Virus record (IMG/VR): IMGVR_UViG_3300032242_000723
Location: 248,001 to 312,000 of that record
Direction: 5' to 3' (one strand)
DNA length: 64,000 nt
Position 1 is the first letter of the stretch. Every line of letters starts with the position of its first letter. A program made the position numbers and the translations under genes. The notes beneath the pieces were generated by a model. It saw only the letters and a program-made list of their open reading frames with translations. It was not told the origin of the DNA and made no database searches. Below are positions 12,199 to 63,932 of the stretch, in pieces.

Positions 12199-12229
12199 TT
12201 GACATGCACTGACAGACAGTGTATAAATA
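12199..12229 (+). promoter_or_regulatory. Dual promoter of tmRNA (sigma70 plus T4-type late TATAAATA)
   Basis: TTGACA 12199-12204, 17-bp spacer, TATAAATA 12222-12229. Confidence 0.75.
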
Positions 12230-12231
12230 AG

Positions 12232-12596
12232 ATTGAAACTGTTGATACAGGATCAAAGTTGGCGTAGACGCGGGTGCGAATCCCGCCGCCTCCACCATAG
12301 ATACACTAAAGGTGAGAACGGCTACCTCACGCACCAGAAATGGTATAGTAACGATAAAACGTGAAGAGATCCAGGATTGCATCTGGTTAGTGTGTCTATG
12401 ATGGGGGCGACTAGAATCGATACGCAATGGCGACGACGAGTAGGTTTCCGGTAAGTTACGACCGACAATTTGTACAAAAAACGTAAATGCTAACTTTATT
12501 GCTAGCAATGACAACGAGTTTGTAGCTATGGAAATGGCTGCTTAATCTGAGTTATTTGGAGCTTCGGGGATGTGCTCTATAACCTAAACATCCTCA
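12232..12596 (+). ncRNA. ssrA: Circularly permuted (two-piece) tmRNA
   Basis: T-arm GCGGG-UGCGAAU-CCCGC plus CGCCUCC-A-CCA ending at 12297 lies upstream of the 5' end GGGGGCG (12403), giving a 7-bp acceptor stem with G3-U70. Tag ORF 12489-12545 encodes ANFIASNDNEFVAMEMAA* after GUAAAU. The outer ends are approximate. Confidence 0.92.
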
Positions 12597-20403: not shown

Positions 20404-20465
20404 CAAATATTTAAATCATGTGTTTCCTTATTAAATAGTTTTGTCATATAATAAGGAGACACAAC

Positions 20466-56300: not shown

Positions 56301-56357
56301 TTATTCCTAGCATAAATATATTCATGAGTCAATGAACTCACTTTTTTGAAGGAATAA
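56301..56357 (+). promoter_or_regulatory. Anti-SD/late promoter/RBS leader
   Basis: TTATTCCT (56301) pairs with AGGAATAA (56350); CATAAATA lies between them. Confidence 0.6.
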
Positions 56358-59619: not shown

Positions 59620-59656
59620 AAGTGATAAATAACTGTAACAACAGGTAATATCACTT
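59620..59656 (+). promoter_or_regulatory. Inverted repeat enclosing late promoter and RBS
   Basis: AAGTGATA (59620)/TATCACTT (59649) abuts the ATG. Confidence 0.55.
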
Positions 59657-61888
59657 ATGGCAATTATCCAGATTTCAAAATTACAAGCCCGATCAGGTAA
59701 TCTAGTAGACCTACCTCAACTAGATGAAGCTGAGTTTGCCTGGGCATCAGATGACAAAAGACTGTTCATCGGTAAAACAACACCAAATGAAAACATCGAA
59801 GTTCTAACTGGCTATTCAAATATTAGCTTTAGTCAGATTACAGGTTCAGTTGGTAACCTTAATATTAATCCTGTAACACTCGCTGACGGGCAAGCACTAA
59901 TATATGACGGGACCAATTGGGTAAATCGTGGCGGCGATGTCGGAGGCTTAATCAATCTAGGCAATGTTGCTAATATAAAGATCACCGGTCAAGCTGGTAT
60001 TGGTTATGTGCTTCAGACAGACGGTCTAGGTAATCTATCTTGGACACCAAAAGGTGCGTTATATACCCCTATCGTCAACCTAACTAACAATACATCTGGC
60101 AATGTCATTACGATGAAGGTTGCCAACACAACGCCATATACTAACAAACAGTTAGTTACGATCAGCGGCGGCGTAATCGCAAATGCATCAGCTTCCGGCA
60201 ATATAAACGGAAAATCATTCTATGTTAAGTTGGCTACTGATTACGCATCAACTGGAAATGTAACTCTATATACTGATCTACTATTAACCACGACAGCTAA
60301 CGGTGCCGGACTGACATCATATACTGCTAACTCAGGTGTAGCGACTGCTAGTTTAGGTTCAGGTTCAGGTACAGCAACTGCTGGCGGAACTAATACTATG
60401 GTTCAGTTTAACAATACTACATTGTTAGATGGTAGTTCAGACTTCACCTGGGATTTTGGTGCAGCTAAAGTTCTTACTGTTGTCGGCAACGCCAACGTAA
60501 CCAATCTAAATGCAACTGGCGTGGGTACGGCTACTCGCTTTATTTCTAACATTGCTACTGGCACTACTCCTCTTCAAGTCGTTTCTACTACTCGTGTTGC
60601 AAATCTAAACGTTGCAAACGCTGGCTATTCAGATATCGCAGGTACAGTAACGACTAATGCTCAGCCAAATATCACTTCAGTTGGATCATTATCTTCACTC
60701 ACTGTAACTGGCAATGCAAATGTTGGTAATGTAGGTACTGCACAAGTTCTCGCAACTGCAAACGTCATCTCACCTCAACTGATCTCTAATATCACTACTG
60801 GAACTGCTCCGTTTGTTGTCACTTCAACTACCCAAGTGGCAAACCTAAATGTAGCAACTGCAGGCACTGTAACAACCAATGCTCAACCAAATATCACAAG
60901 TGTTGGTACTCTAACTGGATTGGGAGTCAATGGTACTATAACAGCAGTCAATATCACCGCAAATACAGGTGTATTCACTGGTAATGGCAATGGATTAAGT
61001 TCCATTGTTGGTGCAAATGTAACTGGAACTGTAACAAGTGCAACTAACGCATCTGCACTATTACAAAACACGTCAACAGCGACTACAGTTTACCCGACAT
61101 TTACTACTTCAAGTGCGAATGGTAACTCATCTGCGGTAATCAATACTTCTATTAGTGCGAATTTAAGTAATGCCTCAATTACAGCTACGACTTTTGTTGG
61201 TGCTTTATCTGGTGCTGCAACAACAGCGGGGACAGTAACCACTAACGCACAACCAAATATCACAAGTGTTGGTACTCTCAGTGCATTAACAGTAACTGCA
61301 AATGTCGCAACAGGCGGAATCAAGACTGACAACTATTATTACGCAAACGGTGTATCAATCAGCTTTGCAGGATCATATAGTAACTCTAATGTAGCTGCTT
61401 ATTTACCAACCTTTACAGGCACTGTGGGAGCAACTGCTCTTACTACAGGTGCAAACACTACAGTAGGCACGATTACTGGTAACTGGGGACTAAGCACTGG
61501 TTCTAAGCTAACTGCAACCTACGCTGACTTAGCAGAATATTATACAGCCGATGCTACATATCTACCGGGCACAGTTCTTGCATTCGGTGGTGATCAAGAA
61601 GTAACACTTGCATTAAATGAAACAAACAAAGTTGCAGGGGTGGTAACTACAAATCCAGCATTCGTGATGAATGAAACTTGCAAAGGTCCTGCTGTAGCGA
61701 TTGCTCTTCAAGGACGTGTACCATGCAAAGTTACAGGCACTATTCACAAGGGTGACATGATGGTCAGTGCAGGAAACGGTTATGCGAAAGCATCGGAATC
61801 ACCGGCAATCGGAACTGTTATCGGCAAATCATTAGAAAACTTCGACGGCATTGATGGTATCATTGAAGTCGCAATCGGCAAAACATAA
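59657..61888 (+). CDS. Tail fibre-like protein with C-terminal intramolecular chaperone-like domain
   Basis: Mtd-N-like start; three AGTVTTNAQPNITSVG(S/T)L repeats; ADLAEYY...GTVLAFGG...IALQGRVPCKV...GDMMVS C-terminus. Confidence 0.75.
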   Translation: MAIIQISKLQARSGNLVDLPQLDEAEFAWASDDKRLFIGKTTPNENIEVLTGYSNISFSQITGSVGNLNINPVTLADGQALIYDGTNWVNRGGDVGGLINLGNVANIKITGQAGIGYVLQTDGLGNLSWTPKGALYTPIVNLTNNTSGNVITMKVANTTPYTNKQLVTISGGVIANASASGNINGKSFYVKLATDYASTGNVTLYTDLLLTTTANGAGLTSYTANSGVATASLGSGSGTATAGGTNTMVQFNNTTLLDGSSDFTWDFGAAKVLTVVGNANVTNLNATGVGTATRFISNIATGTTPLQVVSTTRVANLNVANAGYSDIAGTVTTNAQPNITSVGSLSSLTVTGNANVGNVGTAQVLATANVISPQLISNITTGTAPFVVTSTTQVANLNVATAGTVTTNAQPNITSVGTLTGLGVNGTITAVNITANTGVFTGNGNGLSSIVGANVTGTVTSATNASALLQNTSTATTVYPTFTTSSANGNSSAVINTSISANLSNASITATTFVGALSGAATTAGTVTTNAQPNITSVGTLSALTVTANVATGGIKTDNYYYANGVSISFAGSYSNSNVAAYLPTFTGTVGATALTTGANTTVGTITGNWGLSTGSKLTATYADLAEYYTADATYLPGTVLAFGGDQEVTLALNETNKVAGVVTTNPAFVMNETCKGPAVAIALQGRVPCKVTGTIHKGDMMVSAGNGYAKASESPAIGTVIGKSLENFDGIDGIIEVAIGKT

Positions 61889-62463: not shown

Positions 62464-62557
62464 CTCCTGTTTGATAAATAGATTCATACGCTCTCGCTCG
62501 GAGAGTTTATGCAGTTTAACCCACTGCGTAGCAAGTAGACCTTGCACCAAACAGGAG
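62464..62557 (+). promoter_or_regulatory. Structured multi-hairpin 5' leader with RBS-sequestering stem
   Basis: CTCCTGTTTG/CAAACAGGAG 10-bp stem encloses GATAAATA and three hairpins. Confidence 0.7.
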
Positions 62558-62564
62558 AAAACAA

Positions 62565-63932
62565 ATGGGTCGTCCTCTAAAAATCGCAAAAGCACAAGCC
62601 GTGCTTACTATCACTGATACCAATACAAATGGTACTGTGACTGTCACACAAAATCTAACTACTGAACCAACCGTTGGCGTAGCTGAATGGATGAAGTTCA
62701 CTGTAGCAACTACAGTCGGTGGTCTAACCGCAGGTCAAACTTACTACATTCTTGCTATTACTGGTAATAACACATTCACTGTCTCATCAACACAAAAAAG
62801 CGTTCAACCACAAGTTAGCCCAACATTATCTACTACTACAGGTGGTTCTGTTAGTGCAACTGTTAACGCTGTTGACATGTACTTCAACAATCCAGATGGT
62901 GGCACTGGTTATCCAGCAACTAACGCAAATACTTATTCAGTAGTCGGTGGTAACACTGCACTTTATGGTAAGCAAGTTCTTTGTAACGTAGCATTCGGTG
63001 TCAATGGAACTGGTACTGTATTTGCTAATGCAAGTAGCAACATCGTAGTTGGTCTTGGTACTGACTTCGCGAATCTTGCAACTGGTACAATACTATTTTC
63101 AACTGGTACGGACGGCACCGTGACTCTTCTCGGTACAGGCACTGCAACTAAGGGCAATCTAACAGTTGCACTAGCTAACTCTGCTGCAAACGGTACTATC
63201 GGTACTTCAGGAAATGCACAGACACTATCAGTCAACACTCCGGTTGTATTTAACAGCACATTCGGTGGCAACATCACGTCTGGTACTACTTATTATGTTA
63301 AGGCTATCGCTAACGCAGCCGCATTCACTGTATCAACTACAGTTGGTGGTGCAACTTTAGCATTGAGTGCAAACGCTTCTGTAACTGGTAATGCGATTCA
63401 AAATCGTGTTGTTCTTGGTGCTGTATCTTCAAACGATGCTAGTGCAAATGCATTTGTTCAAGCACTTCCAGAAGCAGGCTATATTGTCCGTCAAAAGGGC
63501 AAGACAAAGTATCTCGTAACTGGCACAACAACGGCTATTACTGGTGCGGTTTATACTGCTAACGTCGCAAACACTGCGTTGACACCAAACACAATGTCAA
63601 TCATTGCAACTAACGCGGCATCTGGTACACAGTATATTTCAAGCGTGAATGATCATAGTTCACAACTATTCCCAGCAACTGTTGCTCCTGGTTCATTAGT
63701 AACTGGTACTGTATATACAATCTACAGTGCAGGTACTACCAACTGGACATCAGTTGGTGCAGCCGCAAACATCACTGGTGTCACATTCGCTGCTACTGGT
63801 ACTGCTTCTGGTACAGGTTTAGCAGTGTTGAGTACTGTTAACCCGGATGTTATTTCTTCATTCAACACAGCCGCTGTTGCGAATGCTGCAAATGGTCAGC
63901 CAAACCCAATCGTCACTATCAACAACGCATAA
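62565..63932 (+). CDS. Virion structural protein with two internal beta repeats
   Basis: MGRPLK start; two G..TYY.......FTVS.T modules; Thr/Ala/Gly-rich. Confidence 0.7.
   Translation: MGRPLKIAKAQAVLTITDTNTNGTVTVTQNLTTEPTVGVAEWMKFTVATTVGGLTAGQTYYILAITGNNTFTVSSTQKSVQPQVSPTLSTTTGGSVSATVNAVDMYFNNPDGGTGYPATNANTYSVVGGNTALYGKQVLCNVAFGVNGTGTVFANASSNIVVGLGTDFANLATGTILFSTGTDGTVTLLGTGTATKGNLTVALANSAANGTIGTSGNAQTLSVNTPVVFNSTFGGNITSGTTYYVKAIANAAAFTVSTTVGGATLALSANASVTGNAIQNRVVLGAVSSNDASANAFVQALPEAGYIVRQKGKTKYLVTGTTTAITGAVYTANVANTALTPNTMSIIATNAASGTQYISSVNDHSSQLFPATVAPGSLVTGTVYTIYSAGTTNWTSVGAAANITGVTFAATGTASGTGLAVLSTVNPDVISSFNTAAVANAANGQPNPIVTINNA

What the first reader, a model, noticed from the sequence alone, without database searches (positions are those of the whole stretch)
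62464..62557. Four-stem structured RNA leader before a virion gene
Seen: a perfect 10-bp stem (CTCCTGTTTG 62464/CAAACAGGAG 62548) sequesters the RBS and encloses the late promoter and three consecutive hairpins: CTCTC/GAGAG (62491), TATGCAGT/ACTGCGTA (62508) and GCAAG/CTTGC (62531). The three inner hairpins remain in the late transcript, so they need a function beyond the timing switch. Inference: an undescribed cis-regulatory RNA, such as a protein-binding autoregulatory site, a stability element or a riboswitch-like fold.
Basis: partly seen in the sequence, partly recalled or inferred. Interest (0 to 1): 0.7.

Follow-up and report, generated by a model that had tools for sequence, protein, structure and literature searches.

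The report
Known phage leader RNA inside translation-blocking stem
The four stems are real, but the three inner hairpins are an already catalogued RNA motif of unknown function (Rfam freshwater-2), here in the late-mRNA leader of a virion-protein gene of a T4-like jumbo phage, and the outer stem is a T4-style device that this phage uses at several late genes.

Summary
All four stems sit at the stated coordinates and form the minimum-energy fold (-37.3 kcal/mol, z = -5.0).

The claim that the RNA is undescribed is wrong. Positions 62490-62567 match Rfam RF02980, freshwater-2 RNA, at 56.7 bits against a cut-off of 49.9.

What I add:
- The window lies in a 333 kb T4-like jumbo phage.
- In 118 viral contigs the motif sits between a T4-type late promoter box (NNTAAATA) and the ribosome-binding site of one gene family (M[G/A]RP...).
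- That family is homologous to a mass-spectrometry-confirmed structural protein of Pseudomonas phage PA5oct. Cultured-phage homologues have the promoter but not the hairpins.
- The predicted late start is about 62486, four bases before hairpin 1.
- The hairpin-2 loop (CCC) covaries with the start codon region (AUGGG or AUGGC), which suggests a pseudoknot.

The outer 10-bp stem is absent from about 100 relatives and kept only in the closest clade. The same promoter-in-hairpin layout recurs at other late genes of this genome, as in T4 genes e, soc, 49 and I-TevI.

The function of the inner motif remains inferred. I favour a gene-specific translational operator, with a stabilising 5' hairpin.

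The parts
62464..62473 (+). 5' arm of the outer 10-bp stem (anti-Shine-Dalgarno, CTCCTGTTTG). It lies upstream of the predicted late start, so it is present only in read-through transcripts.
62473..62480 (+). T4-type late promoter box GATAAATA.
   Evidence: An NNTAAATA box is present in 113 of 114 related loci. In the window, 12 of 16 + strand ATAAATA boxes lie in the 14% of sequence that is non-coding, p = 8e-8.
62486..62486 (+). Predicted start of the late transcript (an A, the 6th nt after the box). This is inferred, not measured.
   Evidence: Five boxes in the window are followed by exactly 5 nt and then ATG, which implies leaderless late mRNAs. The spacing rule for T4 late promoters is from my own knowledge.
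62490..62506 (+). Hairpin 1 (P1 of freshwater-2). It is variable in sequence and length among relatives, sometimes absent, and lies close to the 5' end.
62508..62530 (+). Hairpin 2 (UAUGCNG...CNGCGUA), the sequence-conserved core. Its loop ACCC (62519-62522) is complementary to GGGU (62567-62570).
62531..62545 (+). Hairpin 3. The stem covaries. The loop is UAGAC here and CUAGAAC in the consensus.
62548..62557 (+). 3' arm of the outer stem, containing the Shine-Dalgarno AGGAG (62553-62557).
62490..62567 (+). Extent of the match to Rfam RF02980 freshwater-2 RNA: 56.7 bits, cut-off 49.9, full model 1-84.
62565..63932 (+). Downstream gene of 455 aa, MGRPLKIAK.... It is a member of a virion structural protein family: a conserved N-terminus, a small SH3/Tudor-like barrel core at residues ~295-367, and inserted beta-barrel domains.

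Best explanation
The locus has two layers.

Inner layer. Positions 62490-62567 are a copy of the catalogued freshwater-2 RNA (Rfam RF02980). It forms the 5' untranslated leader of the late mRNA of a virion structural protein gene in a T4-like jumbo phage. Transcription from the GATAAATA box should start near 62486, so the mRNA begins 4 nt before hairpin 1. The family-wide conserved core is hairpin 2 and hairpin 3. The CCC of the hairpin-2 loop probably pairs with the GGG of AUGGG at the start codon, forming a pseudoknot. I infer that this core is a gene-specific translational operator that sets how much of this one virion protein is made. The most likely means is feedback from the unassembled protein or another conserved factor. 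Hairpin 1 at the 5' end would protect the mRNA.

Outer layer. The 10-bp stem is a clade-specific add-on of a known kind. Its 5' arm lies upstream of the start site, so only read-through transcripts from upstream genes carry it. In those transcripts it hides the Shine-Dalgarno sequence, and the gene is translated only from its own late promoter. This is the arrangement described for T4 genes e, soc, 49 and I-TevI.

Confidence by step: identity as freshwater-2 about 0.97. Late-promoter leader of a virion gene about 0.85. Outer stem as a read-through silencer about 0.6. Pseudoknot about 0.5. Operator or feedback function about 0.3-0.35.
For: Identity: the Rfam match is above threshold.

Structure is real as RNA. 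On 126 distinct leaders, 93% of cells pair, with 260 double-sided changes against 72 expected and 0 of 500 shuffles reaching that. Pair 7-20 reads GC 54, AU 43, UA 29, none unpaired. Three of the four hairpin-3 pairs change on both sides.

Promoter. The box is present in 113 of 114 loci. It is enriched in non-coding sequence of the window, and five late genes are leaderless. Boxed genes include the terminase large subunit, virion proteins and baseplate or fibre proteins. The genome has a T4 Gp23-type capsid gene, and a gp15 gene lies next to the locus in relatives.

Gene specificity. All 118 true viral loci, plus 28 further variants, are followed by an M[G/A]R... gene. The genome holds one motif copy.

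Virion protein. hhalign to PA5oct EST35_0383, annotated 'structural protein, ESI-MS/MS', gives 97.7% probability and E = 1.9e-12 (PMC7318152). The gene sits near a NUDIX gene both in the closest relatives of the window and in Sinorhizobium phage Phosso.

Pseudoknot. GCC occurs in the hairpin-2 loop of 7 of 26 leaders that start AUGGC, against 0 of 100 that start AUGGG (p = 8e-6). CCC occurs in 7 of 26 against 74 of 100. There are 7 compensatory cells against 1.4 expected, with 0 of 500 shuffles reaching that.

5' end. In 92 of 104 leaders the MFE fold leaves at most 4 unpaired nt at the predicted start.

Outer stem. It is strong and unlikely by chance. It is kept in the closest clade. The same architecture occurs at window genes 20466, 56362 and 59657 and at two sites elsewhere in the genome. 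Stems of 9 bp or more occur at 4 of 83 sites against 0.2 expected. The T4 precedent is reviewed in PMC3014915.
Against: No transcript 5' end, protein binding or expression was measured. No usable RNA run was listed, and lake metatranscriptome contigs show only that relatives' leaders occur in an RNA library.

The pseudoknot rests on one covarying pair and 3-4 base pairs. The sequences are phylogenetically related, and I enriched the sample for AUGGC variants on purpose.

My sample fixed UUAUGC, GCGUAG and UAGA through the search pattern. The invariance of those bases in my alignments is therefore circular. Their conservation rests on the Rfam consensus.

The protein's conserved N-terminus is equally conserved in cultured phages that lack the RNA motif, so it did not evolve only to bind this RNA.

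The outer stem shows no covariation. Both arms are simply unchanged in four near relatives and both are absent in the next ones. The genes just upstream have their own late box, so an early-versus-late switch is not shown.
Confidence: 0.45

Rival explanations
1. The inner hairpins act only in cis as a generic stability and expression element, with no trans-acting factor. A 5'-proximal stem-loop protects a very abundant late mRNA from 5'-end-dependent decay, and the folded leader keeps the ribosome-binding site exposed.
For: In 92 of 104 leaders the predicted 5' end lies within 4 nt of a stem. About a third of leaders begin with GUUC or UCUAG, complementary to the hairpin-3 loop, and others close a helix with the linker, so the 5' end tends to be base-paired. 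Hairpin 1 is free to vary, as expected of a purely structural element. In the window's late transcript the SD is unpaired.
Against: A generic stabiliser does not explain the nucleotide-level conservation inside the stems of hairpins 2-3 in the Rfam consensus. It does not explain the strict tie to one gene family, while other late genes of the same genome are leaderless or have short leaders. It does not explain the covariation between the hairpin-2 loop and the start codon.
Confidence: 0.3
2. The outer 10-bp stem is a chance or neutral complementarity with no regulatory role.
For: It is absent from about 100 relatives. There are no compensatory changes. After allowing for 59 genes in the window, the chance expectation is about 0.06. 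The mismatched-partner control sometimes gives several stems of 8 bp or more.
Against: The same layout, with a late box between the arms and the 3' arm over the SD or AUG, recurs with stems of 9-26 bp at other late genes of this genome. Stems of 9 bp or more occur at 4 sites against 0.2 expected. It matches an experimentally established T4 mechanism (PMC3014915).
Confidence: 0.2
3. The leader is a riboswitch that senses a small molecule.
For: [quoted passage not shown] Rfam types it as Cis-reg.
Against: There is no multi-helix junction or internal loop with conserved unpaired bases to form a pocket. The conserved bases lie in stems and small loops. It controls a virion structural gene, not a metabolic or transport gene. 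Cultured-phage homologues do without it.
Confidence: 0.03
4. The conserved AUG in UUAUGC starts a regulatory upstream mini-ORF.
For: The AUG is invariant. In the window's subclass the 3' arm of hairpin 1 (GGAGAG) lies 5 nt upstream, like an SD.
Against: The uORF length runs from 2 to 50 codons with no conserved frame or peptide. Only 28 of 126 leaders have an SD-like 4-mer upstream. The AUG is buried in the hairpin-2 stem.
Confidence: 0.03

Closest known systems
Rfam RF02980, freshwater-2 RNA motif (Weinberg et al. 2017, PMC5737381; listed by Rfam as Cis-reg)
   Same: The same three hairpins, the same conserved UUAUGC...GCGUAG and UAGA(A)C elements, and the same AAGGAG...AUG at the 3' end. The match covers the full model, 56.7 bits against a cut-off of 49.9. 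The runs that hold the sequence are labelled freshwater.
   Different: Nothing disqualifying. The window copy has a UAGAC hairpin-3 loop with one extra closing pair, and a shorter linker. Several features are not in the Rfam model as printed. They are the T4-type late promoter box directly upstream, the candidate pseudoknot between the hairpin-2 loop and the start codon, subclass-specific closing helices, and here the outer anti-SD stem. From memory of the Rfam and Wikipedia entries, not checked here, the motif was known only from metagenomes, upstream of genes without a known domain, with its function open.
T4 translational silencing of read-through transcripts by a hairpin that contains a late promoter (genes e, soc, 49, I-TevI; reviewed in PMC3014915)
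   Same: A TATAAATA-like box lies between the arms or within the 5' arm. The 3' arm sequesters the SD or AUG. Transcripts from the internal late promoter lack the 5' arm. The phage is T4-like (Gp23-type capsid, gp15). The layout recurs at several late genes.
   Different: The loop is 74 nt and holds a whole structured RNA motif rather than a few bases. The genes just upstream also have late boxes, so the silenced transcripts need not be early ones. Nothing has been measured here.
Autogenous translational operators with a pseudoknot at the start site (E. coli rpsO/S15), and post-transcriptional self-limitation of a phage assembly protein (P22 scaffolding protein). Both are cited from my own knowledge.
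   Same: A hairpin loop pairs with the start-codon region while the SD lies in the connecting loop. The RNA is tied to one gene, and that gene's product is an assembly component.
   Different: There is no evidence of protein binding. This is a resemblance of architecture only, and no membership is claimed.
5'-terminal stabiliser stem-loops (ompA-type; from my own knowledge)
   Same: A stem-loop lies within about 4 nt of the predicted 5' end in most leaders.
   Different: Stabiliser hairpins need no conserved sequence. Here hairpins 2-3 are conserved at the base level.

Membership tests
Rfam RF02980 freshwater-2 RNA | Covariance-model score at or above the curated gathering threshold (49.9 bits) over the full model | tested here: met
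   56.7 bits, model positions 1-84 of 84, not truncated
Rfam RF02980 freshwater-2 RNA | Three consecutive hairpins with compensatory changes among members | tested here: met
   Hairpin 1 variants CUCUC/GAGAG, UUCAC/GUGAA and CUUGC/GCAAG. Hairpins 2 and 3: 93% of cells paired, 260 double-sided changes, 0 of 500 shuffles.
Rfam RF02980 freshwater-2 RNA | Lies immediately upstream of a Shine-Dalgarno sequence and start codon (cis-regulatory position) | tested here: met
   AGGAG 62553-62557 and ATG 62565. The same holds in 118 viral loci.
T4-type promoter-in-hairpin translational silencing (e, soc, 49, I-TevI) | The 3' arm of the helix covers the SD and/or AUG | tested here: met
   62548-62557 includes AGGAG. 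The MFE fold contains the stem.
T4-type promoter-in-hairpin translational silencing (e, soc, 49, I-TevI) | A late promoter sits so that its transcript lacks the 5' arm | tested here: inconclusive
   The box at 62473-62480 abuts the 5' arm. The start at 62486 is inferred from the box + 5 nt + ATG spacing of five leaderless genes. No 5' ends were measured.
T4-type promoter-in-hairpin translational silencing (e, soc, 49, I-TevI) | Longer transcripts from upstream enter the gene and are poorly translated | not testable with these tools
   No terminator-like site lies between 59657 and 62565, so read-through is plausible. There are no expression data.
T4-type promoter-in-hairpin translational silencing (e, soc, 49, I-TevI) | T4-like late transcription machinery (gp55-type sigma, gp33, clamp) | not tested
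   Support is indirect only: a Gp23-type capsid gene, gp15 in relatives, and the box preceding terminase and virion genes.
Riboswitch | Conserved ligand pocket (junction or internal loop with invariant unpaired bases) and association with metabolic or transport genes | tested here: not met
   The structure is simple hairpins with conserved stems and loops. The downstream gene is a virion protein.
Autogenous translational operator | Specific binding of the encoded (or a dedicated) protein to the leader, with repression | not testable with these tools
Only circumstantial evidence exists: strict gene linkage and an SH3/Tudor-like barrel.
5'-terminal mRNA stabiliser hairpin | A stem-loop within a few nt of the 5' end that lengthens half-life | tested here: inconclusive
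   The position criterion is met by prediction in 92 of 104 leaders. Half-life cannot be tested.

The most novel reading that the evidence does not exclude
Freshwater-2 is a feedback operator for a phage virion protein. Hairpins 2-3, together with a pseudoknot between the hairpin-2 loop and the AUGGG start, are bound by the unassembled product of the downstream gene through its SH3/Tudor-like barrel. This would couple synthesis of that structural protein to its consumption in assembly. It would be a widespread, RNA-structured autoregulation of a structural gene in T4-like aquatic phages, and the first assigned function for this orphan Rfam motif.
Probability: 0.2. Interest if true: 0.65.

Novelty: new member of a known kind. 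Interest (0 to 1): 0.4.

Why it matters
The motif is not new, so the finding as stated loses its main claim. The follow-up does give an orphan Rfam family a concrete biological setting:
- It belongs to T4-like, often jumbo, aquatic phages.
- It is transcribed from a late promoter.
- It always precedes one virion structural protein family, which has a proteomics-confirmed homologue in a cultured phage.
- It may reach the start codon through a pseudoknot.

That turns 'function unknown, gene unknown' into hypotheses testable with reporter fusions, toeprinting and binding assays.

The work also shows that this phage uses the T4 trick of hiding ribosome-binding sites in hairpins that contain late promoters at several genes. 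It also appears to make leaderless late mRNAs. Both points are useful for annotating uncultured T4-like phages.

Tried and rejected
- **Other Rfam families:** only chance-level hits (mir-734, rpfG) turned up in the region.
- **Cultured phages:** DNA and protein searches with the window gene found no match. Only the short homologue reached Phosso and PA5oct.
- **Protein families for the 455-aa protein:** Pfam gave nothing and PHROGs only one sub-threshold hit of unknown function (E 0.006). More than 1900 homologues are all 'hypothetical'.
- **Fold searches:** neither model has a significant PDB match. The only hints are weak SH3/Tudor/FCCH-like barrels.
- **Upstream mini-ORF from the conserved AUG:** rejected, since there is no conserved frame, length or SD.
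- **RegA-type repressor** (the motif contains UUAUG): there is no PF01818 hit in the genome, though the tool's control was also silent. I dropped the idea.
- **Second codons other than GGN or GCN:** the AAATGH and AAATGGH scans gave only chance hits beyond the GCN set.
- **Sharp structural boundary at the predicted start site:** folding from the box end gave a broad distribution, which is not informative.
- **Protein-RNA complex prediction:** not folded by the tool, so it is no evidence either way.
- **RNA-seq evidence for the start site:** no RNA run was listed for the gene. Contigs from a lake metatranscriptome cover relatives' leaders but carry no 5'-end information.
- **tmRNA:** ARAGORN does not confirm the Rfam tmRNA hit.
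- **Bacterial genomes:** only two MAG contigs hold true copies, and no isolate does.
- **Weinberg 2017 supplement:** the part that describes freshwater-2 is not held as text.

Full report

Yes. The sequence shows the following:
- CTCCTGTTTG (62464-62473) pairs perfectly with CAAACAGGAG (62548-62557). The last five bases of that arm are the Shine-Dalgarno AGGAG, 7 nt before ATG 62565.
- Between the arms lie GATAAATA (62473-62480) and three hairpins at 62490-62506, 62508-62530 and 62531-62545.
- RNAfold gives exactly this four-stem fold as both MFE and centroid. The energy is -37.3 kcal/mol against -21.6 +/- 3.1 for dinucleotide shuffles, z = -5.0.

**2. What are the inner hairpins?**

They are a catalogued RNA family.
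- A scan against all of Rfam matches 62490-62567 to RF02980, freshwater-2 RNA, type Cis-reg. The score is 56.7 bits against a gathering score of 49.9, over the complete model.
- It is the only copy in the 333 kb virus record from which the window comes.
- The family comes from the Weinberg et al. 2017 survey (PMC5737381). Its main text does not discuss the motif, and the supplement is not held.

**3. Context in relatives**

A pattern built from the conserved core found 119 viral contigs, of which 118 are true copies. Every one shows three things:
- an NNTAAATA box 14-51 nt upstream of hairpin 2, present in 113 of 114 loci with enough sequence;
- AAGGAG upstream of the start codon;
- an ORF beginning MGRP or MAR.

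The downstream proteins range from 116 to 468 aa. They share the N-terminus and a core motif, G(Y/F)I(V/L)xQ(K/R)G. In the window protein that core lies at residues ~295-367, behind inserted beta-barrel domains.

On what the protein is:
- Pfam does not name it, and PHROGs gives only one sub-threshold hit of unknown function (E 0.006). More than 1900 homologues are 'hypothetical'.
- An AlphaFold model of a 116-aa member is confident (pLDDT 88). Its N-terminal half is an SH3/Tudor-like barrel, with no significant PDB match.
- Predicted viral structures place it with uncharacterised proteins of Agrobacterium phage Atu_ph07.
- tblastn finds a homologue in Sinorhizobium phage Phosso. That gene sits next to a NUDIX gene, as the gene does in the window's closest relatives.
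- tblastn also finds EST35_0383 of Pseudomonas phage PA5oct. Its record says 'structural protein, ESI-MS/MS' (virion proteome in PMC7318152).
- A profile comparison confirms the PA5oct homology: 97.7% probability, E = 1.9e-12.

So 'virion gene' is supported by homology. In Phosso and PA5oct the gene has the box, a short plain leader, the SD and ATGGG(T/A)CG, but no hairpins and no Rfam hit. The RNA motif is therefore an insertion between late promoter and ribosome-binding site in an aquatic subset of this gene family. Runs that hold the window sequence are labelled freshwater or aquatic metagenomes. Among bacterial genome records only two MAG contigs hold true copies.

**4. Promoter and start site**

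- The genome encodes a T4 Gp23-type capsid protein, E = 2e-98. Relatives have T4 gp15 beside the locus.
- In the window, 12 of 16 + strand ATAAATA boxes fall in the 14% of sequence that is non-coding, p = 8e-8.
- The boxes precede the terminase large subunit, virion proteins and baseplate or fibre genes.
- Five boxes are followed by exactly 5 nt and then ATG. This implies leaderless late mRNAs that start at the sixth base after the box, which agrees with the T4 rule as I know it.
- Applied here, the start is A62486. The late mRNA then lacks the 5' arm of the outer stem, keeps all three hairpins, and begins 4 nt before hairpin 1. This step is inferred. No RNA run for the gene was listed, and metatranscriptome contigs give no 5' ends.

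**5. Structure across the family**

On 126 distinct leaders, hairpins 2 and 3 are strongly supported:
- 93% of cells pair.
- There are 260 double-sided changes against 72 expected, and 0 of 500 shuffles reach that.
- Pair 7-20 reads GC, AU or UA and is never unpaired.
- Three of the four hairpin-3 pairs change on both sides.

One caveat applies. My search pattern fixed UUAUGC, GCGUAG and UAGA, so their invariance in my sample is circular. Their conservation rests on the Rfam consensus.

Hairpin 1 varies freely, with compensatory changes, and is missing in some subclasses.

A new point concerns the loop of hairpin 2. It usually carries CCC, complementary to the GGG of AUGGG.
- The second codon is always GGN or GCN.
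- Where it is GCN, the loop has GCC in 7 of 26 leaders, against 0 of 100 for GGN (p = 8e-6). CCC drops from 74 of 100 to 7 of 26.
- On the alignment this pair shows 7 compensatory cells against 1.4 expected, with 0 of 500 shuffles reaching that. The GCC/AUGGC leaders fall in six different downstream-protein classes.
- In the window, ACCC (62519-62522) can pair with GGGU (62567-70).
- I rate this pseudoknot about even odds. It rests on one variable pair in related sequences.

Other subclass features:
- About a third of leaders begin with GUUC or UCUAG, complementary to the hairpin-3 loop: 38 of 104 against 12 expected.
- A subclass with an AUCGGACUUCU linker closes a helix with its GUC 5' end and places CUUCU or CUCCU next to the SD.
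- With the predicted start, 92 of 104 leaders leave at most 4 unpaired bases at the 5' end.

**6. The outer stem**

Among 102 distinct relatives, none has a comparable pairing between the region upstream of the box and the SD region. Their mean z is +0.18, while the window has dG -16.8 and z = -6.9.

The four closest contigs (downstream protein 89-93% identical) keep both arms unchanged. The next relatives (80-83%) have neither arm. The stem is therefore a clade-specific addition without covariation.

Two results argue that it is not chance:
- A 10-bp match arose in 5 of 5000 shuffles, and it is the longest among 59 genes of the window.
- The next-longest stems in the window (genes 20466, 56362 and 59657) have the same layout. 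So do two sites elsewhere in the genome: a 12-bp hairpin (about -25 kcal/mol) and one of about 26 bp (about -32 kcal/mol), each with the box in its loop. In every case the late box lies between the arms or in the 5' arm, and the 3' arm lies over the SD or AUG.
- Genome-wide, 4 of 83 box + SD + ORF sites have stems of 9 bp or more, against 0.2 expected.

This is the arrangement documented for T4 genes e, soc, 49 and I-TevI. There, long transcripts fold and are poorly translated, and transcripts from the internal late promoter are well translated (PMC3014915).

About a third of relatives instead have a terminator-like hairpin just upstream of the box (34 of 102). That would be another way to insulate the gene from read-through.

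Two reservations remain. The fibre gene upstream (59657) has its own late box, so the silenced transcripts need not be early ones. No terminator-like site lies between that gene and our gene, so read-through is plausible but unmeasured.

**7. Mechanism**

Shown:
- identity as freshwater-2;
- RNA-level structure;
- strict linkage to one virion-protein gene family;
- position between a late-type promoter box and the SD;
- the outer stem and its recurrence in this genome.

Inferred:
- the start site;
- the pseudoknot;
- silencing of read-through transcripts;
- the role of the core.

I favour a gene-specific translational operator, for three reasons. Hairpins 2-3 are conserved at base level across phages whose downstream proteins are under 30% identical. 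The motif never accompanies other late genes, several of which are leaderless in the same genome. And the loop reaches the start codon. Feedback by the unassembled protein is one plausible form, with architectural parallels in rpsO/S15 and in P22 scaffolding-protein self-limitation (both from my own knowledge).

The main rival is a purely cis-acting stabiliser or expression element. A riboswitch, a uORF and a RegA-type site are unlikely.

**8. Verdict**

The RNA is a new member of a known family, nested in a known type of phage translational control.

The value of the follow-up is context for an orphan motif: phage origin, late leader, identified gene family and a candidate pseudoknot. It is not a new class of element.

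Noticed in passing
window 12223-12545 (+): Rfam calls a permuted tmRNA (RF04321, 100 bits) with a skipping-rope RNA hit nested inside it (12302-12394). A late-type box ATAAATA lies directly upstream at 12223. ARAGORN reports no tmRNA or tRNA in the window.
   Followed up: partly
window 27951/27963, 31932/31944, 33519/33531, 56836/56848, 56312/56324: Late-type boxes are followed by exactly 5 nt and then ATG, which implies leaderless late mRNAs. The genes include the terminase large subunit (31944) and a virion structural PHROG (33531).
   Followed up: partly
window 20425-20457, 56301-56357, 59620-59656; G000:C1 ~138861-138930 (-) and 318065-318105 (+): Other late genes have hairpins whose loop or 5' arm holds the late box and whose 3' arm covers the SD or AUG. 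Stems are 7-26 bp with energies down to -31.6 kcal/mol. This is a recurrent T4-like promoter-in-hairpin design in this genome.
   Followed up: yes
loci L001-L119 (leaders of relatives): There are subclass-specific extras. About a third of leaders have 5'-terminal GUUC or UCUAG complementary to the hairpin-3 loop CUAGAAC. A linker element AUCGGACUUCU has a GAC that pairs with the GUC 5' end, and its CUUCU or CUCCU can pair with the SD.
   Followed up: partly
window 62464 (run X4, contig record 8): A public-run contig matches the window from exactly the first base of the 5' arm onward, with 1 difference in 154 nt, but has unrelated sequence upstream. This suggests a recombination or module boundary at the start of the regulatory cassette.
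   Followed up: no
L254 (Rickettsiales MAG contig), L255 (Haliscomenobacter MAG contig): True freshwater-2 copies with MGRP genes sit on contigs binned into bacterial MAGs. These are probably phage contigs, so this is weak host evidence at best.
   Followed up: no
window 59657-61888 (+): A 743-aa fibre-like protein has several repeats of a TTNAQPNITSVG-type unit. Its C-terminal part matches tail-fibre PHROGs. The 185-aa gene that follows also matches tail-fibre PHROGs.
   Followed up: no
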